Assembly (NCBI RefSeq): GCF_006345805.1
Contig: NC_043014.1
Location: 39,742,001 to 39,806,000, forward strand
Reading direction: 5' to 3'
Length of the DNA: 64,000 nt
DNA from: Octopus sinensis
Taxonomy: Eukaryota
Made by a program: the position numbers and the translations under genes. The notes under the pieces are model-generated. The model did no database searches. It had not been told where the DNA came from and saw only the letters and a program-made list of their open reading frames with translations. Position 1 is the stretch's first letter; every line of letters starts with the position of its first letter. Below, piece by piece: positions 10,363 to 62,519 of the stretch.

Positions 10363-10750
10363 CAGGAGTGGCTGTGTGGTAAGTAGCTTGCTAACCAACC
10401 ACATGGTTCCGGGTTCAGTCCCACTGCGTGGCATCTTGGGCAAGTGTCTTCTGCTATAGCCCCGGGCCGACCGATGCCTTGTGAGTGGATTTGGTAGACG
10501 GAAACTGAAAGAAGCCTGTCGTATATATGTATATATATGTATGTGTGTTTGTGTGTCTGTGTTTGTCCCCCTAGCATTGCTTGACAACCGATGCTGGTGT
10601 GTTTACGTCCCCGTCACTTAGCGGTTCGGCAAAAGAGACCGATAGAATAAGTACTGGGCTTACAAAGAATAAGTTCCGGGGTCGATTTGCTCGACTAAAG
10701 GCGGTGCTCCAGCATGGCCGCAGTCAAATGACTGAAACAAGTAAAAGAGT
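10363..10750 (+). mobile_element. tRNA-derived SINE family A, full length (representative)
   Basis: Head GGAGTGGCTGTGTGGTAAG (A box) and GGTTCAGTCCC (B-box-like), internal (TA/TG)n, tail (GAGTAAAA)n. Further copies approx.: 378-535+, 890-1095+, 10871-11260+, 14400-14795-, 21750-22190-, 26933-27325+, 28150-28545-, 28615-28980+, 31535-31865+, 32205-32605-, 35185-35570-, 35925-36330-, 44130-44540+, 47310-47545/48900-49008-, 51420-51800+, 54001-54390+, 56464-56915+, 57262-57870+, 62065-62467-. Confidence 0.93.
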
Positions 10751-11786
10751 AATAAAAAAAAAAAAAGAGTAACCAAAATATTCTACTAGTTTTATGTTGA
10801 AAATTACCAGATACAGCTGCTTACACTTACTCTACAACATCATTCTAAAAATAAACAGCCACTCCTACATAGGCGTAGGAGTGGCTGTGTGGTAAGTAGC
10901 TTGCTTACCAACCACATGGTTCCGGGTTCAATCCCACTGCGTGGCACCTTGGGCAGGTGTTTTCTACTGACCAAAGCCTTGTGAGTGGATTTGGTAGACA
11001 GAAACTGAAAGAAGCCTGTTGTGTATATGTATATATATGTGTGTGTGTGTATATATGTTTGTATGTCTGTGTTTGTCCCCCCAACATCGCTTGACAACCG
11101 ATGCTGGTGTGTTTACGTCCCCGTAACTTAGTGGTTCAGCAAGAGAGAATGATAGAATAAGTACTAGGCTTACAAAGAATAAGTCCTGGGGGTCGATTTG
11201 CTCGACTAAAGGCAGTGCTCCAGCATGGCCACAGTCACATGACTGAAACAAGTAAGAGAGTATGCCGTTGAAATCTTGAAGCTATGAGACGGTGTATGAT
11301 TAAATCAAAACAATATGAATAAATAAGCATTATGAGTGACAAAATAATCTGAATGTTAAAGAGTTATGAGTGTGATTGTGAATGAAATGGAACATAGTGG
11401 AGATTAAAAGATTGAGGCATTCTTGGCAATGCTGGATGCAATGATTAGTGTCATAGCTTATCAATGTAGGACATACCTTTAATGAGTTAAACCATTCATT
11501 CTAAAATATATATTTCCGAATGCTTTAATACCTTGAAGAGTGAAGCTTTAAATGAAATTTTCCACCTTCAGTTACACTTAATATGAATGCAAACATTTGA
11601 GTCACATGCATTGATTGTACTATATTGATCTCACTGATTTCATCATACTACTTGATGTTTTGAACTTGATATATTTTCCGATTGCCCTCAGTTGTTATGT
11701 GTAATAAGATAACAATACACTGTTTAACCCTTTTGTTACATATTTCTGTTGAGATATGCTGCCTTTGATTTAATTACTTTTTAAAA

Positions 11787-12303
11787 TCATCATCATCATT
11801 GTTCGACCGTGTCGAGACAATGGAGTTTACTATGCTACGCCAGACTTCACAGTCCATCATAGCATTACGGAGGTCCTGTTGCTGGATGCCTGTATCCCTG
11901 GAGATTACATCAGGGTAGGAGAGTGTGCGCTCTCTGGTATCGTGAGTAGATGGCTTCCAGAGGAGAAGAGTAGAAATTGCCTCGTTTTGAGCTCTACAAC
12001 AATGTCCAGCAAACTGGACTTTCCTACCTTCCACAAGAGGTGATACAGGTGGTAATTTTCCATATGTTTGTATTTTGGTTGGATGGCGCTTCCACGAGAG
12101 ATTTTGAGCTCTCATAAGGAGGCGAGTGTAAGTTCCATCCAACCGCCTCTCAAGCTTCTTTGATAACGTCCAGGTTTCTGAGCCATATAGTAGAATTGCT
12201 TCGACTGTGGCTTTGAAGATTTCAAGTTTGAAGTCTCTACTTAGATCTGATGACCAGATCTTATGCATATCATTACAGGCTGACCAGGCCATACCCTTTC
12301 TAG
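11787..12303 (-). mobile_element. 5'-truncated RTE-clade LINE (RT C-terminus, (GAT)n tail)
   Basis: ORF 11774-12292 with FKATVEAILLYGSETWTL and FAGHC motifs; (ATC)n on plus strand; TTTAAAA flanks both ends (11780-86, 12304-10) as a probable TSD. Confidence 0.92.
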
Positions 12304-15014: not shown

Positions 15015-17172
15015 TTCACATAAAATGTAATCTGTTAGCTGTATGGGTAGGATTTCCTTTATTTGATCTGAAAATTGATAGTAACATTTGGTCTGTCTGA
15101 AGCCGAATACTTCTACCATGGAGAAATCTGTGAAATTTCTTCATGACAAAAATAATCGCTAGAGCTTCTTTCTCTATCTGACTGTACTTTTTTTGTGCTG
15201 CAATCAGAGCACATGAGGCATGAATCATCAGCTTCATATTACTGTCTTTATATTTGTGTAGCAAAACTGCTCCTACTCTGTATTCAGAAACATCAGAAGC
15301 TACAAACAATCTCTGCTGCAGGATTGAAATGAGCCAGCAACAAATCCAAAATTAATATTTTTTTAATATCTTGAAACGCCTTTTCACAGTTATTTGACCA
15401 ATTCCATTAGGCGTCTTTCTTTAGCAAATTATTAAATGGAGTTCTCAATTCATACATGTTTGGTATGTAATTTTGATAATGGTTTGCTAGGCCAAGAAAA
15501 GCTTGTAATTTAATATTCACTTTGTTTACTTTTGCATGTACAAATTTCCCCTTTTTGGTGTCACTTCTACTTCTTGTTGAGAAAACTTTAGAATTTTTTA
15601 TGTTTGTCCTTCCTAACTTTGCTCTGCAATATGAGCTCTTGTGCTCTTTTTGGCAATTGTAACATTTTTTTGCATTTTGAAAGGACAATCCTTCCTGAAA
15701 TGTAGGGCTCCACATCTGTAGCATGGGTTTGGTTTTAACTTTTTTTTTTGTTCATACCCTCCCGGTCGACACACTTGTACTTGTGAGAACTCCTCTTCAG
15801 TTTTCTTTATGTCCTGACGTAAGTTTACCATTCTTTGGCACTCCTCTGCAACTGTCTGCAGGGTTAAGCTTTGGTCCACTGGTTCGAGTTTTGTGAGAAT
15901 TCTTGCATGTATCTCTGCATCTTTGTTTACCATAAGCCCTTGTACAAAAATGAGGCACTTAAACATATCGGGTTAGTTCCTTCAGTTTAAACCGTTTACA
16001 CATTTGGTTTACAGTTCTGGCATATGTGACAAAGTCTTCATCTTTTTTTAACTGGATTCCAACACTCCCATCAAGTATTAAATAGGGAACTCTTATCACT
16101 GAATATTTTTGATAGTAGTTAGACTGTTTCCTGGAAACAAATTCACTAGTTTTTTTGGGTCGTATGAAATTACAATTTTTTTAATGTTCATCCGGTGCTA
16201 ATTTACATAATAATAGTCTTGTTTTTATGTTGTCCATCCATGACTTGCAATCTTCCTTGAAGATTTCTTTGTGCCTTCTAAAGTACGCTGCAAATGTTAT
16301 ACCCTCCTCTGGGTCATAACTGAATTCTGTTATAGAGTTCGATACACATTATAAGTTCGATACAATGAACTTATAATGTTTCTGGACATCCATATTAATT
16401 CCAGCAACTGCTGTTCGACTCTTGGGTACTGTCGTTTTGACTCTTGGGTACAGTTGTTTTGACTCTTGAGTGCTGTTGTTCGACTCTTGAGTGCTGTTGT
16501 TTGACTCTTGAATACTGTTGTTTTGACTCTTGAATACTGTTGTTTTGACTCTTGAATACTGTTGTTTTGACTCTTGAATACTGTTGTTCGACTCTTGAAT
16601 ACTGCTGTTCGACTCTTGAATACTGCTGTTCGACTCTTGAATACTGCTGTTCGACTCTTGAATACTGCTGATCGGCTCGGTTCTGCTGTTGCTATTGCAC
16701 TGCAACTGATTGTGTTGTAGTTGTTGCTGTTGCAGTTGTTGGTGCAACTCCTGTGGTTGTTCTTGCTGTTGTTTTTGCTAATCAGTCTTCCATAATTAAC
16801 AGCTCTGCATCACAGAAATTTGTTAACTGACCTGCGTGAGCTTCGAACCCTCGTTGCCAATATCATAACATAGTTACTCGTCGCCAATTATTGTAGTATC
16901 ACCACTATTTATGATGATACTTGTTTACACTATAACCGTGTAGTAACAATAAAATGTATAATGTAGCAGATAACAACAATGTAACAATTCAACAAACTCT
17001 CCACAAACTATATACAAACCAACAAATGATATTCCGACAAATTACCAAACTACCTTATACCTTCCTGTAATTAATGCCTATTCTCTCTGTCTGTCTCTCT
17101 CAGACTGCTCCTGTTTATAGTTGTTTGGTCAAGTCTATTCTTGCAGGGGGTGTTGTGACTCTCACCACAACA
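15015..17172 (-). mobile_element. Ty3/Gypsy (K02A2.6-like) LTR retrotransposon remnant: 5'LTR, PBS, gag, internally deleted pol, RNase H; 3' truncated
   Basis: Minus strand encodes FSYDPEEGITFAAYFRR (gag), CYRCGALHFRKDC (zinc knuckle), LQAFLGLANHY (RT end), VASDVSEYRVGAVL...YSQIEKEALAIIF (RNase H); many frameshifts and stops. Putative LTR 16892-17172 with TG..CA ends; TGGCGACGAG PBS at about 16877-16886. Confidence 0.92.
16410..16676 (-). repeat. 21-bp tandem repeat (about 12 units, GACTCTTGAATACTGYTGTTY) in the Gypsy gag 5' region
   Basis: Directly visible; translates on the minus strand as (IQESNSS)n with 1-nt slips. Confidence 0.92.
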
Positions 17173-19611: not shown

Positions 19612-19903
19612 TTTGCACACATGCACAGTTTAGCCAGGTCACTGTTATCTCCCTTGTCACTAAACCTTTCTTCCAGTCAGTTCAACATGTGAAACTGTTA
19701 ATCTAGACATTTCTTTCTCTCTCTCTCTTTTCTTTCCTCACTCCCTTTCTGTAGAAGAGTGTAGCCTGAAAACGTTAAAGACTTTGCCATTTTTCCTGAG
19801 CATCAAACTAATTACACCTTATTTGTTCTTCCCTCACCTGTCTTTGTCTTCTGATTTTTGTTTTTTGTACAATTTTGAACCAGATACACACACACACATT
19901 TAT

Positions 19904-19934
<31 letters not shown>

Positions 19935-20378
19935 CACACACATACATACATACACACATATATATATACACACACGTATATATATATATATGTATTTATG
20001 TTTATGTATATATGTATATATATATGTGTGTATATATGTATATATATGTGTGTGTATATATATATGTGTGTATATATGTATATATATGTGTGTGTGTATA
20101 TATATACACGCATATATATGTATATATATGTATGTATATGTATGTATGTTTGTATGTATGTATGTGTGTGTGTGTATATATATATATATGTGTGTGTGTG
20201 TATGTATATATATATATATATATATATACACGCATATATATGTATATATATGTATGTATATGTATGTATGTTTGTATGTATGTATGTATGTATGTATGTA
20301 TGTATATGTATGTATGTATATATATATATGTATGTATGTATATATATATATATATGTGTGTGTGTGTATATATATAAA
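19085..20378. repeat. Compound (TA/CA/TG/TATG)n microsatellite field
   Basis: Directly visible; source of many spurious YI/VC-rich ORFs. Confidence 0.9.
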
Positions 20379-20382
20379 TGCC

Positions 20383-20452
20383 ACTGATAGGACTTGAAAT
20401 TATGTGGGGAGACTCCAATGGATTTCTAGTCCATCGCCTTAACTATCTAGCC
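20383..20452 (-). pseudogene. Degenerate tRNA-Ser(AGA), lacking 5' acceptor strand (copy 1)
   Basis: Reverse strand GGCTAGATAGTTAAGGCGATGGACTAGAAATCCATTGGAGTCTCCCC aligns to the canonical eukaryotic tRNA-Ser(AGA) body; T-arm decayed. Confidence 0.8.
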
Positions 20453-20455
20453 AAA

Positions 20456-20530
20456 TAACCAAGTGGTTAAGGCGATGGTCTGTTAATCCATTGGGCTCTC
20501 CCTGTATGAATTCGAATCTCATCCTCATCA
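20456..20530 (+). pseudogene. Degenerate tRNA-Ser(GCT)-derived sequence with anticodon mutated to GTT (copy 1)
   Basis: AGTGGTTAAGGCGATGGTCTGTTAATCCATTGGGCTCT...TTCGAATCTCATCCTCATCA aligns to the tRNA-Ser(GCT) body with C>T/G>A decay. Confidence 0.8.
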
Positions 20531-20941
20531 ACTAAATTATATATATAGGAAAATAAGGAATAAGTGAAATTTTACCAGTGAATGTGTTAGATTATAAGGT
20601 ACAAAAAGAAAATTACTCTCCCCAGACACAACAGAATATGCTTCAACACATGAACTCATATAAATAATCTTGCAAACTAAATCCAAAAACAAAATATATA
20701 TATATATATATATATAATATATATATATATATACATATGAGAGAGAATCCACTAAAGTGGACGCCCTTACGCTAAAGATAGATCCACATGAGTCTCAACC
20801 ACTAAGAATTGTTCTCAAGAAAAATTTAGCACACTATGAACGTAAGCGAGCAGGACAAATGAAAAATAACAAAAATATAGATTAACCCCATACAATTGAT
20901 GTTATTAAATTAATATACAATTTTTTCACCCTCATTTTGAG

Positions 20942-20973
<32 letters not shown>

Positions 20974-21978
20974 TCACACATACATATACATACATACATA
21001 CACACACACAAAATATCAATAAGTGGTGATGGATTCCACATGCTTTATTACATATCACTACAATTGTTTCAACACATCATTACTAGAAAATGCTGTGTTA
21101 TTCTTCAGGTGTGACTAAAAGGAGCTGTTTTGCCAGTATAGGCAATTTTTGAATGAGTGCTCTGTGAGCTTATGTAGCTTGTTTCTTCTTGGCATGTAAA
21201 CTTTTACGAAACAAACTATAAATATCAGGAATTTTCCTCAACACCGTTTTTGATTTGATTGCAATTATATTGCATTATAACACATGGGATCCTAGATGAG
21301 CCCATGTGCTATTTTATAAGGTAATGAGCATGTAGAATTATTAGCAGGTCGAGCAAAATGCTCAGTGGCATTTTGTCCATCTCTACCTTTTGAGTTCAAA
21401 TTTTTCTGGGGTCAACCTTCCCTTTCATCTTTTCAGGGTCGATAATTAAGTACCAGTTGTGCACTGGGGTCAATATGATAAACTTATCCCTTCTCCCCCA
21501 AATCAGGCTTATGCCTGTAATAAAAAGGATTATGATTCTCATTGATATAAGACAATTTCTGCATACAGCTGTAACTTACCTTTATGTTGTAGCTGTTGAA
21601 CAGCTGTTGGAATTTGTGGATATTCCAAAAAATAGAGCTGATCGGAGACAGAAAACATTTTGCTATATTGGTTCTTGACTTTTAATACATGTCAGTTATT
21701 CCAAATAACACTTCTTTTTGCAGTACTTTTGAGGTGTTTGTTATTAACTCTTTTACTCTCTTTTACTTGTTTCAGTCATTTGACTCTGGCCATGCTGGAG
21801 CACCACCTTTTAGTCGAGCAAATCAACCCCAGGACTTATTCTTTGTAAACCTAGTACTTATTCTATAGGTCTCTTTTGCCGAACCACTAAGTTACGGGGA
21901 CGTAAACACACCAGCATCTGTTGTCAAGCGATGTTGGGGGGAAAAACACAGACACATAAACACATACATATATTATAT

Positions 21979-22020
<42 letters not shown>

Positions 22021-22450
22021 TATGACGGGCTTCTTTCAGTTTCCGTCTACCAAATCCACTCACAAGGCTTTGGTCGGCCCAAGGCTATAGTAGAAGACAC
22101 TTACCCAAGGTGCCACGCAGTGGGACTGAACCAGAACCATGTGGTTCGAAAGCAAGATACTTACCGCACAGCCACTCCTACGGCTATATTTGCTGTTAAT
22201 GAATACTTAAATTTTTTTCTGCTTATGGTTGTCTGTTAGTACTCAGTGGATTCCTTGGACTACAATACACTTATCTTACTGATATTTTGGGTCCGTGTAT
22301 TTTTAGTATTGTGTGAGTGGTTTGATGCTGTGTTGATGCAAAATGGGATGTTTGGTTTCAGTAATTTGAAACAAGCTTACTGTTACAAGGTTTGCTTGAA
22401 CGCTCATTCTCAAACTGTATTTGAACGTCCTGATTTATTTCCTAAATGCT

Positions 22451-22599
22451 ACTGATAGGACTTGAAATTATGCGGGGAGACCCCCAATGGATTTCTAGTC
22501 CATTGCCTTAACTATCTGACCAAATAGCAGAGTGGTTAAGGCGATGGTCTGTTAATCCATTGGGCTCTCCCTGTATGAATTCAAATCTCATCCTCATCA
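22451..22599. pseudogene. Second copy of the head-to-head tRNA-Ser(AGA)/tRNA-Ser(GCT>GTT) fusion
   Basis: Near-identical to 20383-20530 including shared derived mutations and the flanking ACTAAATT. Confidence 0.8.
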
Positions 22600-23796
22600 A
22601 CTAAATTTTTTGCTGCACACGATATTCATAATCATAAGCTTATGATATACGCACTAGTTCATCTTAATGCCAACAAAGAACTTTCTGTTATTTTGAGCAA
22701 GGACATGTTCACAAATTATAACAAATTGTAACACTAGCATGTGAACATAATAATTCACAGGCTTTAACAGCATCAGAATTTTTTGTAATAATACCCTTCT
22801 TCTTAATTCACTAATTCTTCTTAATTTGCTAAAATGAAGAGATATCTTGGTATGCATATAATCACATTGTAAGGTGTTTGTGTTTTAGAAAATTGGATGG
22901 TTTTTAGAAGAAGGATAAAAATCAACAAGAACACCATGTTATATAAATCTATAATTATCTTTTCTTTGATGCCACTGAACCACATGGCATCTGCTACAGT
23001 GTTGTTCCTTGCTTACGTATAAGAACAAATACAAAGGATTAAAAAAAATTCTGTCACATCTCACTTGGATGTCTTATTTTTAAAAAAATTATTCTCACTT
23101 ACCTTTATGGAAATGGGTATATCTCTTAAATAAGTGGATTGATTCAGGAAAGCTGTTAAAGCTAATTTTAAAATATTAGGTTATTTTGATCCTTTTAAAT
23201 GATGTAAAATGAAGCTATTTATCCATTTCTTGAAAAAAGTTTCCATGTCACCGATATCTTGGTGATGCAATGAATATATAAAGTTTCTCGGAATAAGTAC
23301 ACATCTTACATAAATCTAGATCATTTTGAAAATGTGTTATTTCTTCTGAATGAGTATAAAGATACATATTCCCTCTCCTATTCTATTGTATTTCCAAGTT
23401 AAATAGATTTTTCTTTGCTTTTTCAAACAAAGATCACACTTTCTACACTTTCATTACAGCTGTTCCTATGTTGCCCTTCTTTTATAACTTTGTTAGGCCT
23501 ATCAACTGGCTCTGCTTGACACAATGACAATAGTAGTCTAATAGAACTTATTGAGAAGCTAACAATGCATTTAAGAAGATGGAGGGAGTGAGTTGGAGGA
23601 AGGTTGCAACAGAAACAGGACAGGCAAAAGAAATATTTGAGTGGCTGATTTAACAACTGTATCCAAATGATAACAGTTCTCGGCTGCTTACAAACTAGAT
23701 ATTGTGTTTACACACTCCTGGCAATAATTATCTCTCTTTGGGGGCCCCACTCCGTAATAGTAGTAGCAACTGCTGGATCTTATATTAAATCAAAAC

Positions 23797-24787: not shown

Positions 24788-25195
24788 GATATAATATATA
24801 TATATTATACACACACACACACATACATGTGTGTGTGTGTGTATAAGACAAGGAAAGTGGGTAGTTAGAAATCTCTCTTTATATATATATAGACACACAC
24901 GTATATATATACATGTATATGTATGTGTGTGTATATGTATGTATATATATATATATATACATATATATACATATATAATATATATACAATATATACTATA
25001 TATATATATATATATATATACATATATATACATATATATATATATATAATATACATATATATACAATATATATATATATACATATATATACATATATAAT
25101 ATATACATATATATACATATATATATACATATATATACATATATATATACAATATATACATATATATATACATATATATATATTATATATATAAC

Positions 25196-25228
<33 letters not shown>

Positions 25229-25361
25229 ATAGATATATATATATATATATATATACAATATATATATACTATATATATAATATATATATAATATATACAT
25301 ATATATACATATATATATACATATATATATATATAATATATATATCTACATATATATATAC

Positions 25362-25420
<59 letters not shown>

Positions 25421-25807
25421 CATATATATAAAATATATATACATATATATATATACATATATATTATATATATATACATATATATATACATTATTATATA
25501 TATATACATATATATATATACATATATATATATACATATATATATATACATATAATATATATATATTATATATACATATATATATATACATATATATAAT
25601 ACATATATATATAATATATATACATATATATATATACATATATATATATATACTAACATATATATATACATATATATATATACATATATATAACATATAT
25701 ATATATACATATATATATATATACATATATATACATATATATATATATACAATATATATATACATATATAATAACATATATTATACATATATATATACAT
25801 ATATATA

Positions 25808-25846
<39 letters not shown>

Positions 25847-29830: not shown

Positions 29831-30487
29831 TATTAATGCTATATTGTAATGTCTACATCAATGCGTTTTTGTTATGCAAAAGAGGCTTGTCCTTCTTTCT
29901 TCCTAAACCAGAATTGTTTACATATTTTCAAAATTACTTATAAAAAGCTAATTCCTAAAATGAAGTAATTTGTTGATAGGAGATCACACTGCTATCTTTA
30001 TTTCCTAATTATGTACTTATTTCTATTGTATTCACCACATGTATCATCTGATATATGTTTCTATTATCCTCTTACTGTTGAGTTGCCTTTTACTGTGTTT
30101 ATATTAGATTCAGACCTTGTTCAGGTTCCAACTTGCTAGACAGTTGTTTTCTAATGAATCTTGCTTGGGGGCAATAAAAGTAATCAGTACGAACCGAAGG
30201 ACCTCAAGTTTTAATTATTTTACTTTTTTTAAGTGTTGAAAATTGGAATAATAATTTTAAGTATTGAACACTAATATACAATTAACCCTTTCGTTACAAT
30301 ATTTCTATTTGAATGCCTTTGTTTGAATCAGTTTTGAAAATATTGAAGAATTTAGGAAAGTAACTATCATAATAAGGTGGTATTTGGAACAGAAAGTAAT
30401 TTAAAATTTTGATAGAAGTATTTTAAACTATATTTCGTTTTTGGATTTGGTTTGCAAGATTCTTTATATGAGTTCATGTGTTGAAGC

Positions 30488-30720
30488 ATATTCTGTTGTG
30501 TCTGGGAGAGTCATTTTCTTTTTGTGCCTTATAATGTAACACAATCACCGGTAAAATTTTCACTTATTTCTTATTTTAATTTTCCTAAAATTTTCATTGC
30601 GCCTTGCAACCTTTTCATTAGGAAAATAAAAATATGAAATAAGTGGAAATTTTACCGGTCAGTGTGTTAAATAATAAGGCACAAAAAGAAAATGACTCTC
30701 CCCAGACATAACAGAATATT
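30488..30720. repeat. Long inverted repeat (about 98-bp arms, 33-nt loop); family member also at about 20560-20695
   Basis: 30488-30586 pairs with 30620-30720 with scattered mismatches. Confidence 0.85.
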
Positions 30721-31619
30721 TTAAACACTTTGAAACAGGAAGTTTGTATCATAGAACCAAGAGCAGTCTCAAAAGGGTTAAAATCTTTTTCCATCAATTG
30801 TTTAACATCTACTTTTCCCTGCTTGCATGAGTCAGATGAGATCACGTTAAGATAGTTTTCTGTGGCTATCAACTTTCACCTGTTTCCAATGGGTAAAGAC
30901 CCCCTTCTGTCATGCATGACAATGGAATTGCATCTAGAAAGTTACCCCCTGAGGCACAAGTCTGGGCAAGGTTGTTTATGGAAGGCCAGGAGTTGCCCAT
31001 GCATACCGACCTTCCCTCTCCACGCCACCAGTGTTATCCAAGGGAAACACAAAGACCGATTTATCTTGGCACCAGTGATGTCGCAACTCATTTCTACAGC
31101 CAAGTGAACTGGAGTGAACATAAAATAAAGTGTCTTGCTCAAGAACACCACACAGCTCAGTCCGGGAATCAAACTCTCTACTTCATGATTGTGAGCCCAA
31201 CGCTCTAACCACTGAGCCATGCACCTTCACATTCACTATAACCCTTCTGTATATTGGTTTCAAATTTTGGCACAAGGCCAGAAATTTCAGAGGAGGGAGT
31301 AAGTCGATTACATTGACCCCCAGTACTCAACTGGTACTTATTTTACCAATCCTGAAAAGACGAACGACAATGTTGACCTCAGCAGAATTTAAACTCAGAA
31401 CATTAAGTCAGAAGAAATGTTGCTAAGCATTTTTTTTTTTTGGTGTGGTAACGATTCTTCCAGCTCACTGCTTAAATCCTTCAGTATATTAAGAAGTGAA
31501 GAATTTGAATGTGGTTATGTACAAAATTGAAAAGACCAATGCCTTGTGAGTGAATTTGGTAGACGGAAACTGAAAGAAGTCTGTCGTATATATGTATATA
31601 TATATTATATATATATATA

Positions 31620-48904: not shown

Positions 48905-50525
48905 GGCTTCTTTCAGTTTCCATCTACCAAATCCACTCACAAGGCTTTGGTCAGCCCGAGGCTATAGTAGAAGACACTTGCCCAAGGTGCCATGCAGTGG
49001 GACTGAACACTATTGTTGAAATATTTTAAAATATTTTCTGAGTATAACTGATTTTATTGCTCATAAATTTTAACAATAAAATCTCATGACCATATGGAAC
49101 CCAGTAAACAGCCACTGCTCTACAGTATCAAATGATTGTGAGTAAAAATACTATTTGAATACTTTGCTCAGTGAGCAAAGATGATTTGGGTTAATCAATA
49201 ACTTTGTACTTTAATATTTTCTAAGTAGTTTAGAAAAGGCAGTGAGTTGGCAGAATCATTAGTGCATTGGGTAAAATTCTTAGCTGCATTTCTTAGTTCT
49301 AATACTACCTTGGTCAACTTTGCTTTTCATCCTTTCAGAGTTATCACCATATCACCATTATCACTTAAACTTACATTTTTCCATGCTTGTATGAGTCAGA
49401 CAGCATTTATTGAGGCAGATTTTCTATGGCTGGATGCCCTTCCTGTTGCTAACCCTCACTTGTTTCCAAGCAAGTTTATATTTCCCTGTGACCAGACAGC
49501 TATCACGCAATATCAAGACAAGGAGACACAAACATGCATACACTCATATGATGGGCTTCTTTCAGTTTTTGTCTACCAAATCCATTCATAAGGCTTTGGT
49601 CGGCCTGGGGCAATAGTAGAGGGCACTTGCTTTAACTTGCCACACAGTGGGACTGAACCCAAAACCATGAGGTTGGGAATCAAACTTCTTACCACATGAC
49701 CACACCTACGTGGTCAACAAAGTACCAGTCAGTTACTGGGGTTGATGTAATTGACTTGCTGCTTCCCTCTAACACTGCTGGCCTTGTGCCAAAATTGAAA
49801 CTTATTGGGCCCTGATAGTAATTTTTGACTCGACCAATCCTATGACTGGCACCCGGCAGTTGCCAGTGCCGCTGGACTGACTCCTGTGCAGGTGGCAAGT
49901 AAAGAAACACCGTTTTGACCCAGTGCTTGAGGAGACCTATTGAGTCAAGTACACCAACATCAAAAATCAATGGAAATTGTAGTTGTGATCCCTGTGCCGG
50001 TGGCATGTAAAAAGCACCATCCAAACGTGGCCAATGCCAGTGCCGCCTTGACTGGCTTCTGTGCCGGTGGCATGTAAAAAGCGCCAATCTGATCGTGGCC
50101 ATTTGCCAGCTTCCTCTGGCACGTAAAAAGCACCCACTACACTCATGGAGTGGTTGGCGTTAGGAAGGGCATCCAGCTGTAGAAACACTGCCAGATCAGA
50201 CTGGAGCTTGGTACAGCCTTCTGGCTTCCCAGATCCCGGTCGAACTGTCCAACCCATGCTAGCATGGAAAACGGACGTTAAACGATGATGATGATGATGA
50301 TGATGATGTGTACTTTATCATATTCATCTCTCTAATCAAAACTGCCACTTTTCTACCATTTCAAACACCTCATCAATGATTATAAATCACTCCTGTCATC
50401 TTTCATTGATTATAAGATAATAACTCATTTCTGTACACGATCACTTAGATGAACAGTATTTTGAAATAGGTGAAGAACATAGAAATAAAAATGAAAATGT
50501 TGAATACCTAGTTGTCTGGCTGTTA

Positions 50526-51454
50526 GACAGATTTCTTGTAAAGGGTACTTATTGTAAACTGTATCAATTTTGAAAAGATGTTGCATCAGAAATAATATGT
50601 TGCATCAGGAGTGGCTGTGTGGTAAGTAGCTTGCTTACCAAGACAGATTTCTTGTAAAGGGTACTTATTGTAAACTGTATCAATTTTGAAAAGATGTTGC
50701 ATCAGAAATAATATGTTGCATCAGGAGTGGCTGTGTAGTAAGTAGCTTGCTTACCAAGACAGATTTCTTGTAAAGGGTACTTATTGTAAACTGTATCAAT
50801 TTTGAAAAGATTGTTGCATCAGAAATAATATGTTGCATCAGGAGTGGCTGTGTGGTAAGTAGCTTGCTTACCAAGACAGATTTCTTGTAAAGGGTACTTA
50901 TTGTAAACTGTATCGATTTTGAAAAGATGTTGCATCAGAAATAATATGTTGCATCAGGAGTGGCTGTGTGGTAAGTAGCTTGCTTACCAAGACAGATTTC
51001 TTGTAAAGGGTACTTATTGTAAACTGTATCAATTTTGAAAAGATGTTGCATCAGAAATAATATGTTGCATCAGGAGTGGCTGTGTGGTAAGTAGCTTGCT
51101 TACCAAGACAGATTTCTTGTAAAGGGTACTTATTGTAAACTGTATCAATTTTGAAAAGATGTTGCATCAGAAATAATATGTTGCATCAGGAGTGGCTGTG
51201 TGGTAAGTAGCTTGCTTACCAAGACAGATTTCTTGTAAAGGGTACTTATTGTAAACTGTATCAATTTTGAAAAGATGTTGCATCAGAAATAATATGTTGC
51301 ATCAGGAGTGGCTGTGTGGTAAGTAGCTTGCTTACCAAGACAGATTTCTTGTAAAGGGTACTTATTGTAAACTGTATCAATTTTGAAAAGATGTTGCATC
51401 AGAAATAATATGTTGCATCAGGAGTGGCTATGTGGTAAGTAGCTTGCTTACCAA
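50526..51454 (+). repeat. Tandem array of 8 x 116 bp; each unit is 80 bp flank + 36 bp SINE head
   Basis: Units start at 50526, 50642, 50758, 50875, 50991, 51107, 51223, 51339; the last runs into a complete family A SINE. Confidence 0.95.
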
Positions 51455-53034: not shown

Positions 53035-53605
53035 AAGGCGGCGAGCTGGCAGAAACATTAGCACGCCGGGCGAAATGCGTAGCCGTATTTCGTCTGCCGT
53101 TACGTTCTGAGTTCAAATTCCGCCGCGGTCGACTTTGCCTTTCATCCTTTCAGGGTCGATAAATTAAGTACCAGTTACACACTGGGGTTGATATAATTGA
53201 CTTAATCCATTTGTCTCCTCTGTGTTTAGCCCCTTGTGGGTAGTAAAGAAATAGGTATTTCATCTACCGCTACATTCTGAGTTCAAATTCCGCCGAGGTC
53301 GACTTTGCCTTTCATCCTTTCAGGGTCGATAAATTAAGTACCAGTTACGCACTGGGGTTGATATAATCGACTTAATCCATTTGTCTGTCCTTGTTTGTCC
53401 CCTTGTGGGTAGTAAAGAACTAGGTATTTCATCTACCGCTACATTCTGAGTTCAAATTCCGCCGAGGTCGACTTTGCCTTTCATCCTTTCGGGGTCGATA
53501 AATTAAGTACCAATTAGGCACTGGGGTTGATGTAATCAACTTAATCCTTTTGTCTGTCCTTGTTTGTCCCCTCTGTGTTTAGCCCCTTGTGGGTAGTAAA
53601 GTAAT
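53035..53605 (+). mobile_element. SINE family B with tandemly reiterated body
   Basis: Head GGCGGCGAGCTGGCAGAA followed by three successive bodies containing GTCGACTTTGCCTTTCATCCTTTC(A/G)GGGTCGATAAATTAAGTACCA. Other copies approx.: 555-770, 9340-9725-, 21340-21530, 31255-31470-, 39470-39640, 42595-42830, 52670-53000-, 58950-59430. Confidence 0.88.
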
Positions 53606-55652: not shown

Positions 55653-56622
55653 GTAAGTGAGATCAGACTATATTTTGTAAAACTGTATTATCTTGTTATA
55701 GTTGTTATTTAATCTTTAATCTTTAATGTGCCCTTTTAAAGCCTAGCTAGGCTCATGGGCCTGGTTTCCCAGTTTCTATGGCGTATGTGTTCCCCAGCTG
55801 GACGGGACGCCAGTCCATCGCAGCGTTACTCATTTTTGCCAGCTGAGTGAACTGGAGCAACATGAAATGAAGTGTTTTGCTCAAGAACACAACACGTCAT
55901 CCAGTCCAGGAATCGAAACCACAATCTTACGATCATAATGCTGACACCCTAACCACTAAGTCACGCACTTCACATAATAAATGCACCCTTTTAAAGCCTA
56001 GTCAGGCTCATGGGCCTGGTTCCCCGGTTTTTATGCCATATATGCTCCCCAGCTGGACGAGACGCCAGTCCATCGCAGCGTTACTCATTTTTGCCAGCTG
56101 AGTGGACTTGAGCAATGTGAAATGAAGTGTTTTGCTCAAGAACACAACACGTCACCTGGTCCAGGAATCGAAACCACAATCTTACGATCATGGTGCTGAC
56201 ACCCTAACCACTAAGCCACGTGCCTCCACATAGTTGTTATTTATGTATCTCAAAACTATATATGCAGTTTCCTTTCTAAGTATTAATCTTGATGATATTC
56301 AAAGGTATTATATAAGTCAGTGCTGTAAAAAACCCAAATCATAAAAGTTAAATAGATGAGTTGATTGAGTTTATATTAGGAGTATTAGTGAATATCTCTT
56401 ATCTGTTATTTTGAATTTTTTTAGGATTCTTGTAAAATTATTTAAATTTTGTTATCATTATTTAGGCGTAGGACTAGCTGTGTGGTAAGTAGCTTGTTTA
56501 CGAACCACATGGTTCATTCCCAGTGCATGGCACCTTGGGCAAGTGTCTTCTACTATAGCCTCGGGCCGACCAAAGCCTTGTGAGTGGATTTGGTAGAAGG
56601 AAACTGAAAGAAGCCTGTCGAA

Positions 56623-56693
<71 letters not shown>

Positions 56694-57364
56694 GCGTGTG
56701 TGTGTCTGTGATTGTCCCCCCAACATTGCTTGACAACCGATGCTGGTGTGTTTATGTTCCCGTAACTTAGTAGTTCGGCAAAAGAGACCGATAGAATAAG
56801 TACTAGGCTTACAAAGATTAAGTCCTGGGGTCGATTTGCTCGACTAAAGGCGGTGCTTCAGCATGGCCACAGTCAAATGACTGAAACAAGTAAAAGAGAA
56901 AAAGAGAAAAGAGAATTATTTTCAATTAAGAATTTCAGCTAAGAACGAATTATTTTCTAATTAGATTGCTTCTGTTATTTGCTCATTCTGCAACTATCAC
57001 CATTATTATAGTTCAAGGCTTTGTTACTGTTGACTGAAGAATAATAGTCACTATCAGTATTTCCTTACTGAACCAAGTTGGATAGGTCAGCGTGGAATAA
57101 AATGATTAAGTGCACTGGCGATTTGGCATGGCTGACTGGACATTGAACCTGTTTTGGCAATAGTACATTTTGATGCTGGAAGCAAACAGACATGCACATA
57201 CACAGACACACACACGCACACGTGTGCATGTGTAACATGCACAGGAATATAGACTCACAGATAGGCGTAGAAGTGGCTGTGTGGTAAGTAGCTTGCTTAC
57301 CAACCACATGGTTCCAGGTTCAGTCCCACTGCGTGGCACCTTGAGTAAGTGTCTTCTACTATAG

Positions 57365-59210: not shown

Positions 59211-59841
59211 TAGGTGGTGCGTTGGTAGAATTGTTAGCAAACTGGACAAAATGCTGCTAAGCATTTTCTCTGTCTTTACATTCTGAGTTCAAATTCCACC
59301 AAGGTTGACTTTGTCTTTCATACTTTCAGTGTCAATGAAACAAGTTACCATCCAAGCACTGCGGTCATTGTAATCAACTACTTTCCCTCCCCTTAAAATT
59401 CAGTCCCTGTGTCTATAGTAGAAAGATCATCAATTATAATATCACCATTAACTAACAATCGCTGTTCACCCTTTTCTTCATAATGTTCATTAGATGAGTC
59501 GACATAGTCTGTATGAGCTCTCTGCATTGTCGGTGACACGTAAAAAGCACCAACCGATCGTGGCCATTTGCCAGCCTCCTCTGGCCCCTTGCCGGTGGCA
59601 CGTAAAAAGCACCCACTACACTCACCGAGTGGTTGGCGTTAGGAAGGGCATCCAGCTATAAAAACACTGCCAGATCAGACTGGAGCCTGGCACAGCCTCC
59701 TGGCTTCACAGACCCCAGTCGAACTGTCCAACCCATGCTAGCATGGAAAACGGATGTTAAATGATGATGATGATGATTTCCTTTTTATTCCATATTATTT
59801 TGCTATGTTGTTTTCTTCATATTTATTTTCTTTGTTTAAAG

Positions 59842-59984
59842 ATATTGTCGATGGTAACCTGAAATGTATTATGCGCCTTATTCTGGCATTAGCAGCCCAC
59901 TTTAAGCCTAATTCAGTAAAGCACCAATCTGTAGCTGGTGTTATCTCGCCAAACCGAGGGAGATCTTTAGCGAGTATAGCACAG
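59842..59984 (+). CDS. DIXDC1: Dixin/DIXDC1-like exon, CH domain end (DIVDGNLKCIMRLILALAAHFKPNSVKHQSVAGVISPNRGRSLASIAQ)
   Basis: AG at 59840-41, GTGAGT at 59985; 143 nt, ends phase 0; DIVDGNLK.IMRL.LALAAHFKP is characteristic of Dixin CH domains. Confidence 0.93.
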
Positions 59985-61992: not shown

Positions 61993-62519
61993 GCAATTTT
62001 CAAAGTGTGTGGAGATGATTAATTTATCAGTTTTTTTTCCTGATGATAAATGAGGAAAGATACTCTTTTACTCTTTTACTTGTTTCAGTCATTTGACTGC
62101 GGCCATGCTGGAGCACCGCCTTTAATCGAGCAACTCGACCCCAGGACTTATTCTTTTGTAAGCCCAGTACTTATCCTATCGGTCTCTTTTGCCGAACCCC
62201 TAAGTAACGGGGACATAAACACACCAGCATTGGTTGTCAAGCAATGCTAGGGAGACAAACACAGACACACAAACACACACATACATATATACATACATAT
62301 ATACGACAGGCTTCTTTCAGTTTCCATCTACCAAATCCACTCACAAGGCATTGGTCGGCCCGGGGCTATAGCAGAAGACACTTGCCCAAGATGCCACGCA
62401 GTGGGACTGAACCCGGAACCATGTGGTTGGTTAGCAAGCTACTTACCACACAGCCACTCCTGCGCCTATATGAATTATATTTAAATAATTTATTGTATTT
62501 TTGCTTACATTTATTATAG

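What the first reader, a model, noticed from the sequence alone, without database searches (positions are those of the whole stretch)
20383..22607. Head-to-head fusion of two different tRNA-Ser isoacceptors, present twice as a roughly 155-bp unit
Seen: at 20383-20538 and 22451-22607 a minus-strand tRNA-Ser(AGA) and a plus-strand tRNA-Ser(GCT) are joined at their D-arms by about 5 nt (AAATA), both lacking the 5' acceptor strand. Both copies share derived changes (anticodon GCT>GTT, TGTATGAATT, 3' ACTAAATT) but have different flanks, so the fused unit was copied as a whole. Because the isoacceptors are similar, about 30 nt of each half are reverse-complementary (CCAATGGATT...CCTTAAC / GTTAAGGCGATGG...AATCCATTGG). 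Inference: this is a tRNA-built foldback element with divergent Pol III box remnants. It could be a new tRNA-derived MITE or bidirectional SINE-like family, or a hairpin source of small RNAs inside the Dixin pre-mRNA. It matches none of the SINE families in this window.
Basis: partly seen in the sequence, partly recalled or inferred. Interest (0 to 1): 0.72.

Follow-up and report, generated by a model that had tools for sequence, protein, structure and literature searches.

The report
Duplicated head-to-head tRNA-Ser pseudogene palindrome
Two decayed serine tRNA genes are fused back to back into a 165-base hairpin-forming block that has been copied once, 1.9 kb away, inside an intron; it is a real curiosity of genome decay and repair, and whether it is a mobile family cannot be decided without the rest of the genome.

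Summary
Two same-strand copies (20375-20538 and 22443-22607) are 93% identical and have unrelated flanks. Each is an antisense tRNA-Ser(AGA)-like sequence abutting a sense tRNA-Ser(GCT>GTT)-like sequence. Each folds into a hairpin of about 55 bp (-69 and -78 kcal/mol, z -8.5 and -11).

One detail needs correcting. The antisense tRNA appears full length, because its 5' strand pairs at 6 of 7 positions with its 3' strand. Only the sense tRNA is truncated, starting at nucleotide 8. The join is a 4-nt overlap (TAGC), not a 5-nt linker.

No internal Pol III promoter could transcribe the whole unit. Both B boxes had already decayed before the duplication. There is no terminal inverted repeat and no SINE tail. 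Both copies are bounded on both sides by the same pentamer, TAAAT. No third copy or solo arm exists in the 64 kb.

My best reading has two steps. A chimeric tRNA pseudogene formed once, by twin-priming-type reverse transcription or by microhomology deletion between divergent genes. It was then copied once, locally, at the DNA level into a (TA)n tract. A dispersed MITE-like family is nearly as likely. No cephalopod DNA was reachable with these tools, so genome-wide copy number is untested.

The parts
20375..20538 (+). Copy 1 of the whole unit (164 bp), including the bounding TAAAT at 20375-20379 and TAAAT at 20533-20537. It sits at the right edge of a roughly 500-bp (TA/TG)n tract.
22443..22607 (+). 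Copy 2 of the whole unit (165 bp), including the bounding TAAAT at 22443-22447 and TAAAT at 22602-22606. Its flanks are unique sequence.
22447..22528 (-). Copy 2: antisense tRNA-Ser(AGA)-like pseudogene, apparently full length (model positions 1-71). The acceptor stem pairs at 6 of 7 positions. The anticodon AGA is the complement of 22494-22496. There is no CCA end; the discriminator is followed by TTTA.
22525..22599 (+). Copy 2: sense tRNA-Ser(GCT>GTT)-like pseudogene starting at tRNA position 8. The A box TAGCAGAGTGG matches TRGCNNAGTGG at 9 of 9 specified positions. The anticodon GTT is at 22551-22553. The B box is decayed. There is no CCA end; the trailer is ACTAAATT.
22525..22528 (.). Copy 2 junction. 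TAGC is shared by both tRNAs: it is the reverse complement of positions 1-4 of the antisense tRNA and positions 8-11 of the sense tRNA.
   Evidence: alignments; read directly from the sequence
20379..20459 (-). Copy 1: the antisense tRNA-Ser(AGA)-like pseudogene, more decayed than in copy 2. The anticodon AGA is the complement of 20425-20427.
20456..20530 (+). Copy 1: the sense tRNA-Ser(GCT>GTT)-like pseudogene from position 8. The covariance-model match is local, model positions 8-63. The anticodon GTT is at 20482-20484.

Best explanation
The unit is a dead chimeric tRNA pseudogene, not an active Pol III element.

Step 1 (inferred): a complete tRNA-Ser(AGA) copy and a tRNA-Ser(GCT) copy lacking nucleotides 1-7 were joined 5'-end to 5'-end through 4 nt of microhomology. 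The sequence GCTA at the start of one tRNA is the reverse complement of TAGC, the start of the A box of the other. There are two possible routes. One is a twin-priming-type event, in which the two ends of a staggered break each primed reverse transcription of a Pol III transcript and the two cDNAs were joined. This route would explain why each tRNA ends a few bases after its discriminator without CCA, and why the block is flanked by a 5-bp direct repeat. The other route is a microhomology-mediated deletion between two divergently oriented tRNA genes.

Step 2 (shown): the block then decayed. The anticodon changed from GCT to GTT, both T arms and B boxes were lost, and CpG sites eroded. These changes are shared by both copies.

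Step 3 (copying as a unit is shown; the mechanism is inferred): the whole block, delimited by TAAAT on each side, was copied once at the DNA level to a site 1.9 kb away in the same orientation. The most likely mechanism is microhomology-guided repair synthesis (templated insertion) at a break in or next to the (TA)n tract that holds copy 1. The copy that results is again flanked by TAAAT.

The unit has no demonstrated function. If it lies in an intron transcribed from the + strand, the RNA would fold into an imperfect hairpin of about 55 bp.
For: - Whole-unit identity of 93% with unrelated flanks.
- One tRNA complete and one starting at position 8, with a 4-nt overlap.
- Neither 3' end carries CCA (read directly from the sequence).
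- Both copies share decayed B boxes, matching 5-6 of 9 specified positions. All four arms score below the tRNA gathering score.
- The two promoters point away from each other, so neither could produce an RNA of the whole unit (geometry).
- There are only two copies in 64 kb and no solo arm. They lie 2.07 kb apart in the same orientation. Two random sites in 64 kb fall that close with P = 0.064, and about half that if the same orientation is also required.
- TAAAT occurs once per 395 nt in this window, so the same pentamer at all four borders is not chance.
- Copy 1 is embedded between (TA)n sequences.
- Outside the 20-nt centre the copies differ at 6 of 145 positions. Three of those are CpG transitions. 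The pair is therefore more similar than most copies of the abundant roughly 440-bp repeat in the window are to each other (mostly 70-88% identical).
- Published precedent exists for antisense tRNA segments in chimeric retro-insertions explained by twin priming (PMC13174262).
Against: - The genome-wide copy number is unknown, so a dispersed family would overturn step 3.
- Templated insertions of 165 bp whose borders coincide with the natural ends of the structure require the donor's TAAAT repeats to have guided both junctions. That is plausible but unproven.
- No LINE part, poly(A) or other mark of reverse transcription is present, so the RNA route for step 1 is not shown.
- Four of the 6 pairs supporting a complete antisense tRNA come from the TAGC that also belongs to the other tRNA. 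I estimate a chance of about 0.01 for 6 of 7 pairs at a fixed register, but this is not proof.
Confidence: 0.45

Rival explanations
1. The two copies are members of a dispersed, non-autonomous DNA element family that is MITE-like or foldback-like. The tRNA palindrome is the body of the element. It inserts at TAAAT, or at TAA or TA followed by chance AT-rich matches, and the two nearby copies reflect local hopping or high copy number.
For: - The ends are precisely shared and the flanks are unrelated.
- An identical short direct repeat sits at all four borders, as expected for a target-specific insertion.
- The whole unit is a strong hairpin.
- The changes shared against canonical tRNA look like a family consensus that had drifted from its tRNA source.
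- The genome is repeat-rich and carries at least one other foldback element, at 30429-30728.
- DNA transposons are known to reinsert nearby (established knowledge).
Against: - No third copy, degenerate copy or solo arm exists in 64 kb, even with a profile search at maximum sensitivity.
- The outermost nucleotides are not inverted repeats. By eye, only about 5 of 13 match, and the palindromy is internal.
- As far as I recall, no transposon superfamily makes an invariant 5-bp TAAAT duplication.
- Two random sites fall within 2.07 kb with P = 0.064.
Confidence: 0.38
2. The unit is a Pol III-driven tRNA-derived SINE, either bidirectional or dimeric, that spreads by retroposition from its own internal promoters.
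For: - The A box in the sense arm of copy 2 is a perfect match, 9 of 9 specified positions.
- The tRNA-related sequence exceeds the SINEBase criterion of 60% identity over 60 nt (criterion from PMC3531059).
Against: - Each promoter transcribes outwards from the junction, so no Pol III transcript can contain both arms. Yet both arms were copied together.
- The B boxes are decayed in both arms of both copies.
- There is no LINE-derived body and no repeat or poly(A) tail.
- No solo arm is present in the window.
Confidence: 0.04
3. The hairpin is a functional RNA element inside the host intron, kept for its structure. It could be a small-RNA precursor (hairpin RNA or miRNA-like) or an ADAR editing substrate.
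For: - The hairpin is very stable: 54-58 pairs, z -8.5 and -11.
- Differences between the copies cluster in the 20-nt loop region. Five of the 12 differences scored fall there (one of the 12 is the first flank base), binomial P about 0.01. This fits a stem that is more constrained than the loop.
- Inverted tRNA pairs in human introns are predicted to form dsRNA (bioRxiv 10.1101/2025.01.24.634786).
Against: - The arm complementarity of 72-74% at the DNA level is what two Ser isoacceptors give for free.
- No Rfam miRNA family comes near its gathering score; the best is 36.8 bits against 90.8.
- With two sequences no covariation can be tested.
- Loop-centred mutation is also expected from hairpin or cruciform extrusion without any selection.
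- No expression data are available.
Confidence: 0.08
4. The two copies arose independently, each from the same pair of pseudo-tRNA transcripts, with the same junction dictated by the TAGC/GCTA microhomology.
For: - The junction region is the most divergent part of the unit.
- The microhomology would favour the same join each time.
Against: This needs two source RNAs already carrying all the shared decay changes, the same TAAAT target twice, and the same trailer lengths twice. No such solo source sequence is present in the window.
Confidence: 0.03

Closest known systems
Twin-priming chimeric retro-insertions, such as the antisense tRNA / LINE-1 chimeras (Ostertag & Kazazian 2001; PMC13174262)
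   Same: Two segments lie in opposite orientation with their 5' ends meeting at an internal junction. The junction shows short microhomology. The 3' ends face outwards next to short direct repeats.
   Different: Here both halves are tRNAs. There is no LINE segment and no poly(A). The host is a mollusc-like genome whose LINEs are not known to make processed pseudogenes. The product was later copied as a unit.
Dimeric tRNA-derived SINEs, such as the Twin SINE of Culex pipiens (Feschotte et al. 2001, cited in PMC3531059)
   Same: The element is built from two tRNA-related modules and is under 200 bp.
   Different: Twin is head-to-tail, is transcribed by Pol III from the left monomer through the whole element, carries a tail, and is present in many copies. 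None of these holds or could be shown here.
MITEs and foldback elements
   Same: They are short, non-coding, fold into a hairpin, are flanked by short direct repeats, and occur as copies with unrelated flanks.
   Different: There are no inverted repeats at the extreme termini. The flanking repeat is an invariant pentamer that I know of for no superfamily. Copy number is unknown.
Inverted pairs of intact tRNA genes predicted to form dsRNA in introns (human dsRNAome preprint, 10.1101/2025.01.24.634786)
   Same: Inverted tRNA sequences within a transcribed intron give a long duplex.
   Different: Those are separate, intact genes with spacers. Here the two are fused, truncated and decayed.
Ordinary tRNA pseudogenes and locally templated insertions from microhomology-mediated repair
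   Same: The tRNA-like sequence is decayed and scores below threshold. A nearby copy has microhomology at both junctions.
   Different: Templated insertions are usually far shorter than 165 bp (from my own knowledge). The coincidence of the borders with the tRNA ends needs the pre-existing TAAAT repeats.

Membership tests
SINE (SINEBase definition, PMC3531059) | Short (<1 kb) interspersed, non-tandem repeat | tested here: met
   The unit is 164-165 bp. The two copies are 1.9 kb apart with unrelated flanks.
SINE (SINEBase definition, PMC3531059) | [quoted passage not shown] | not testable with these tools
   The window holds only two copies. No cephalopod genome is reachable.
SINE (SINEBase definition, PMC3531059) | At least 60% identity to a tRNA over at least 60 nt | tested here: met
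The tRNA covariance model scores 28.1 bits.
SINE | A sense-oriented Pol III head at the 5' end whose transcript spans the whole element, plus a 3' tail (poly(A) or simple repeats) | tested here: not met
   The arms point outwards from the centre. The B boxes match at 5-6 of 9 specified positions. The unit ends in ACTAAATT with no repeat tail.
MITE | Terminal inverted repeats at the extreme ends | tested here: not met
   The outermost nucleotides are GCCACTGATAGGA and the reverse complement of the other end is GTTGATGAGGATG. By eye about 5 of 13 match. The complementarity is internal.
MITE | Target-site duplication typical of a transposase superfamily | tested here: inconclusive
   Both copies are flanked by the same TAAAT. 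It could be read as a 5-bp duplication, as TAA or TA plus chance matches, or as part of the unit.
MITE | Many copies, and a related autonomous element with matching ends | not testable with these tools
   No genome is available, and no related longer element exists in the window.
Functional tRNA gene | Reaches the detection threshold, with an intact cloverleaf and an anticodon consistent with its type | tested here: not met
   ARAGORN finds no gene. All four arms score below the Rfam gathering score of 29. The GTT anticodon sits on a long-variable-arm, Ser-type body. The T stems are broken.
Twin-priming chimeric retrocopy | Two segments in opposite orientation, their 5' ends meeting at a junction with microhomology | tested here: met
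   The 4-nt overlap is TAGC and both 3' ends face outwards.
Twin-priming chimeric retrocopy | A LINE 3' segment or poly(A) at one end, and a target-site duplication unique to the locus | tested here: not met
   There is no poly(A) or LINE sequence. The flanking repeat is the same at both loci.
miRNA precursor (Rfam families) | Reaches a family's gathering score | tested here: not met
   The best match is MIR8675 at 36.8 bits against 90.8. These are generic hairpin matches. A gathering-threshold scan of the whole window gave nothing.

The most novel reading that the evidence does not exclude
The unit is the founder type of a mobile family made only of two inverted tRNA relics, and it moves as a DNA hairpin. 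Its ends would be defined by the tRNA 3' ends and by recombination or microhomology at a fixed TAAAT site. That would resemble a circle-and-site-specific-recombination or single-strand hairpin mechanism rather than a transposase acting on terminal inverted repeats. It would be a new way for tRNA genes to seed non-autonomous elements, and an intronic source of long dsRNA in an animal with heavy RNA editing.
Probability: 0.12. Interest if true: 0.7.

Novelty: new variant of a known kind. Interest (0 to 1): 0.35.

Why it matters
If this is only a two-copy relic, its value is as a clean natural example. It would show how tRNA sequences can be fused 5'-to-5' through the conserved A-box microhomology, and how a palindromic block can be re-copied locally with microhomology at both junctions. 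That makes it useful for annotation, because such units will be miscalled as tRNA pseudogene pairs or miRNA-like hairpins. If it is a family, it would be a tRNA-derived element that cannot spread by the Pol III and LINE route that defines SINEs. It would also scatter roughly 55-bp dsRNA-forming hairpins through introns.

Tried and rejected
- Searches for more copies outside the window all came back empty. A pattern requiring both arms head-to-head was run against metagenome and viral contigs. An inverted D-arm pattern was run against metagenome and prokaryote genome contigs. A right-arm-specific 22-mer was run against genome and viral contigs. These collections evidently hold no cephalopod DNA, so the negatives say nothing about copy number.
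- I translated the longest open frame across the unit and searched the 5.8-billion-protein set, hoping for spurious ORFs called on other copies. No candidate was found.
- Exact look-ups of window ORFs next to copy 2, and of a LINE ORF, were meant to fetch contigs of the same or sister species. None is on record.
- A search with the CH-domain-like exon found only three unnamed short ORFs at 63-68% identity. The one long contig retrieved, L001, has no copy of the unit.
- Larger segmental duplication: rejected, because the flanks share no homology.
- The unit as part of the neighbouring foldback element (solo arm at 20550-20698, full element at 30429-30728): rejected as a general feature, because copy 2 has no such neighbour.
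- Helitron, Transib, Tc1/mariner and Harbinger end or target signatures were checked by eye. None fits both ends.
- Literature searches for inverted or palindromic tRNA elements, tRNA-derived MITEs and cephalopod repeat surveys gave no description of such a unit. Repbase and Dfam could not be consulted.
Full report
**What is there**

The window is AT-rich (36% G+C) and packed with interspersed repeats and microsatellites. BLASTN of each copy against the whole window finds one partner. The pair is 20375-20538 and 22443-22607, at 93.3% identity over 165 aligned columns, E 2e-67, both on the + strand.

The pairwise alignment shows where the similarity starts and stops. It starts at TAAAT|GC(C/T)ACTGATAGG and stops at CATCAAC|TAAATT. 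The sequences on either side are unrelated. A flank-to-flank BLAST over 2-3 kb on each side finds nothing.

A profile HMM built from the two copies was run with all filters off. It finds only the two copies and their own reverse-complement self-matches (E about 1e-19). No third copy, degenerate copy or isolated arm appears in the 64 kb.

**tRNA nature of the arms**

ARAGORN reports no tRNA in the window, and no Rfam family reaches its gathering score anywhere in it. With relaxed thresholds, the tRNA covariance model hits all four arms just under its 29-bit cut-off:

| Arm | Coordinates | Bits |
|---|---|---|
| Copy 2, + strand | 22518-22599 | 28.1 (E 3e-4 in the 191-nt search) |
| Copy 1, + strand | 20456-20522 | 25.4 |
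| Copy 2, - strand | 22447-22528 | 23.5 |
| Copy 1, - strand | 20407-20460 | 17.8 |

Both arms have the long variable arm of type II tRNAs.

The left arm is 95-97% identical to Ser-AGA positions 18-57, against 88-89% for Ser-CGA and Ser-TGA. The right arm aligns to Ser-GCT from position 10 or 11 through position 81, at the 3' end of the acceptor strand, at 79-80%. It aligns to Ser-AGA only through position 54.

The anticodon loops read CTAGAAA (AGA) and CTGTTAA (GTT). GTT is one transition from GCT. The two-isoacceptor reading is therefore supported.

**The junction, corrected**

The covariance-model alignment of copy 2 gives the minus-strand tRNA a 5' strand, GCUAUU. It pairs G-C, C-G, U-A, A-U, U-G and U-A with the 3' strand CAGUAGC. 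Copy 1 also pairs at 6 of 7 positions, three of them G-U.

The plus-strand tRNA behaves differently. The bases upstream of its position 8 pair at only 2-3 of 7 positions. In copy 1 the model matches only positions 8-63.

The simplest description is a complete antisense tRNA abutting a sense tRNA that begins at U8. The two overlap by 4 nt, TAGC at 22525-22528. This sequence is the reverse complement of positions 1-4 of one tRNA and also positions 8-11, the start of the A box TRGC, of the other.

A caveat applies. Four of the six pairs come from that shared tetranucleotide. My estimate of about 0.01 for chance pairing at a fixed register is suggestive, not proof.

Neither 3' end has CCA. The antisense tRNA's discriminator is followed by TTTA. 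The sense tRNA's discriminator is followed by ACTAAATT.

**State of decay and timing**

In both copies the B boxes match GGTTCGANNCC at only 5-6 of 9 specified positions, and the T stems are broken. The sense-arm A box is still 8-9 of 9. Because these defects are shared, the block was already a pseudogene when it was duplicated.

The alignment scored shows 12 differences, one of which is the first flank base. That leaves 11 differences within the unit:

- Five fall in the 20-nt centre (binomial P about 0.01). Four of these read as G-to-A on the + strand against the canonical D-arm sequence recalled from memory.
- Three of the other six are CpG transitions.
- One is a 1-nt indel.

Outside the centre the pair differs by about 4%. 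That makes it more similar than most copies of the abundant roughly 440-bp repeat in the same window are to each other (mostly 70-88% identity).

**Hairpin**

As RNA, each unit folds into one long imperfect hairpin:

| Copy | Pairs | G-U pairs | Energy (kcal/mol) | z against dinucleotide shuffles |
|---|---|---|---|---|
| 1 | 54 | 10 | -68.9 | -8.5 |
| 2 | 58 | 7 | -77.8 | -11.4 |

At the DNA level the arms are 72-74% complementary. That is about what two Ser isoacceptors placed in inverted orientation give without any selection. The miRNA-family matches from Rfam (best 36.8 bits against a 90.8-bit cut-off) are generic hairpin matches.

**How it could have formed**

Both tRNAs have their 3' ends facing outwards and their 5' ends meeting at a microhomology. 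This is the geometry produced by twin priming, in which reverse transcription starts from both ends of a staggered break and the two cDNAs are joined. The recent survey of LINE-1 chimeras uses twin priming to explain why tRNA segments are predominantly antisense to the LINE-1 part (PMC13174262).

That route would account for three features: the absence of upstream sequence, the short trailers, and a flanking 5-bp direct repeat. The alternative is a microhomology-mediated deletion between two divergently oriented tRNA genes, which needs no reverse transcriptase. I cannot separate the two routes. No poly(A) or LINE segment is present.

**How it was copied**

A SINE mechanism is excluded by geometry. 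Each internal promoter would transcribe only its own arm, away from the junction, yet both arms were copied together. The B boxes were already degenerate, and there is no tail.

A MITE mechanism lacks its defining terminal inverted repeats, since by eye only about 5 of the outermost 13 nt match.

The same pentamer, TAAAT, bounds both copies on both sides. It occurs once per 395 nt in the window, so this is not chance. Three readings remain:

- a strict insertion target;
- a terminal direct repeat belonging to the unit;
- microhomology used at both junctions of a DNA-level copying event.

Several observations favour the third reading. The copies are 2.07 kb apart in the same orientation, and two random sites in 64 kb are that close with P = 0.064. 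There is no other copy in the window. Copy 1 sits between (TA)n sequences at the edge of a roughly 500-bp (TA/TG)n tract, a break-prone context.

I therefore slightly prefer a single local templated copy (0.45) over membership of a dispersed MITE-like family (0.38). The decisive datum is genome-wide copy number, together with orthologous empty sites.

**What could not be done**

No collection reachable here holds cephalopod DNA:

- Pattern scans of metagenome, viral and prokaryote contigs were empty.
- A search with the translated unit found nothing.
- Window ORFs are not on record.
- The CH-domain-like exon at about 59835-59984 has only 63-68% identical unnamed relatives.

As a result, neither the source species nor the 'Dixin' assignment could be confirmed. 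Literature searches found no description of inverted tRNA-tRNA elements. The nearest items are head-to-tail dimeric tRNA SINEs (cited in PMC3531059) and a passing note that inverted tRNA genes in human introns are predicted to form dsRNA. Repbase and Dfam were not available.

**Verdict**

It is best filed as a new variant of tRNA-derived pseudogene or chimeric insertion that was re-copied as a unit. Interest is moderate to low unless a genome-wide search shows a family.

Noticed in passing
window 30429-30728, with related pieces at 20550-20698 and 63-145: A foldback, MITE-like element. Its arms at 30504-30588 and 30618-30702 are 92% complementary around a 29-nt loop. A solo arm (92.7% identical) lies 11 nt to the right of copy 1 of the tRNA unit, and a fragment lies at 63-145.
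   Followed up: partly
window 21742-22189 and at least 25 other sites (for example 56460-56906, 62062-62471, 10364-10757): A very abundant SINE-like repeat of about 440 bp with an internal (TA)n stretch. One copy lies between the two tRNA units. Copies are mostly 70-88% identical to it.
   Followed up: partly
window 50525-51454: A tandem array of 8 copies of a 116-bp unit at 99% identity. The end of the unit matches the 3' end of the roughly 440-bp repeat (30-nt hits at 93%). This looks like a very young satellite grown from a repeat end.
   Followed up: no
window 53085-53577, and the dispersed copy at 21326-21543: A 169-bp unit repeated 2.9 times in tandem (93% matches). It belongs to a dispersed repeat of about 160-200 bp with 12 hits in the window.
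   Followed up: no
window about 31150-31225, minus strand: A tRNA-like SINE head (GGCTCAGTGGTTAGAGCG...GTTTGATTCCCGG), unrelated to the Ser unit beyond the D arm.
   Followed up: no
window 15016-15966 (-) and 11774-12292 (-): Retrotransposon remnants. One ORF carries an RNase H-like domain of reverse transcriptases (PF17917, E 7e-19). A LINE-like C-terminal ORF has a weak DUF6451 match.
   Followed up: partly
window about 59835-59984 (+): A likely coding exon, FKDIVDGNLKCIMRLILALAAHFKPNSVKH..., resembling the end of a calponin-homology domain. The best database relatives are unnamed ORFs at 63-68% identity, one of them on a 57-kb ENA contig (L001).
   Followed up: partly
window 19880-20375 and 24880-25828: Very long (TA)n and (TG)n microsatellite tracts of about 500 bp and 950 bp. 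They draw many spurious sub-threshold miRNA-family matches such as mir-297 and mir-466. Copy 1 of the unit abuts the first tract.
   Followed up: no
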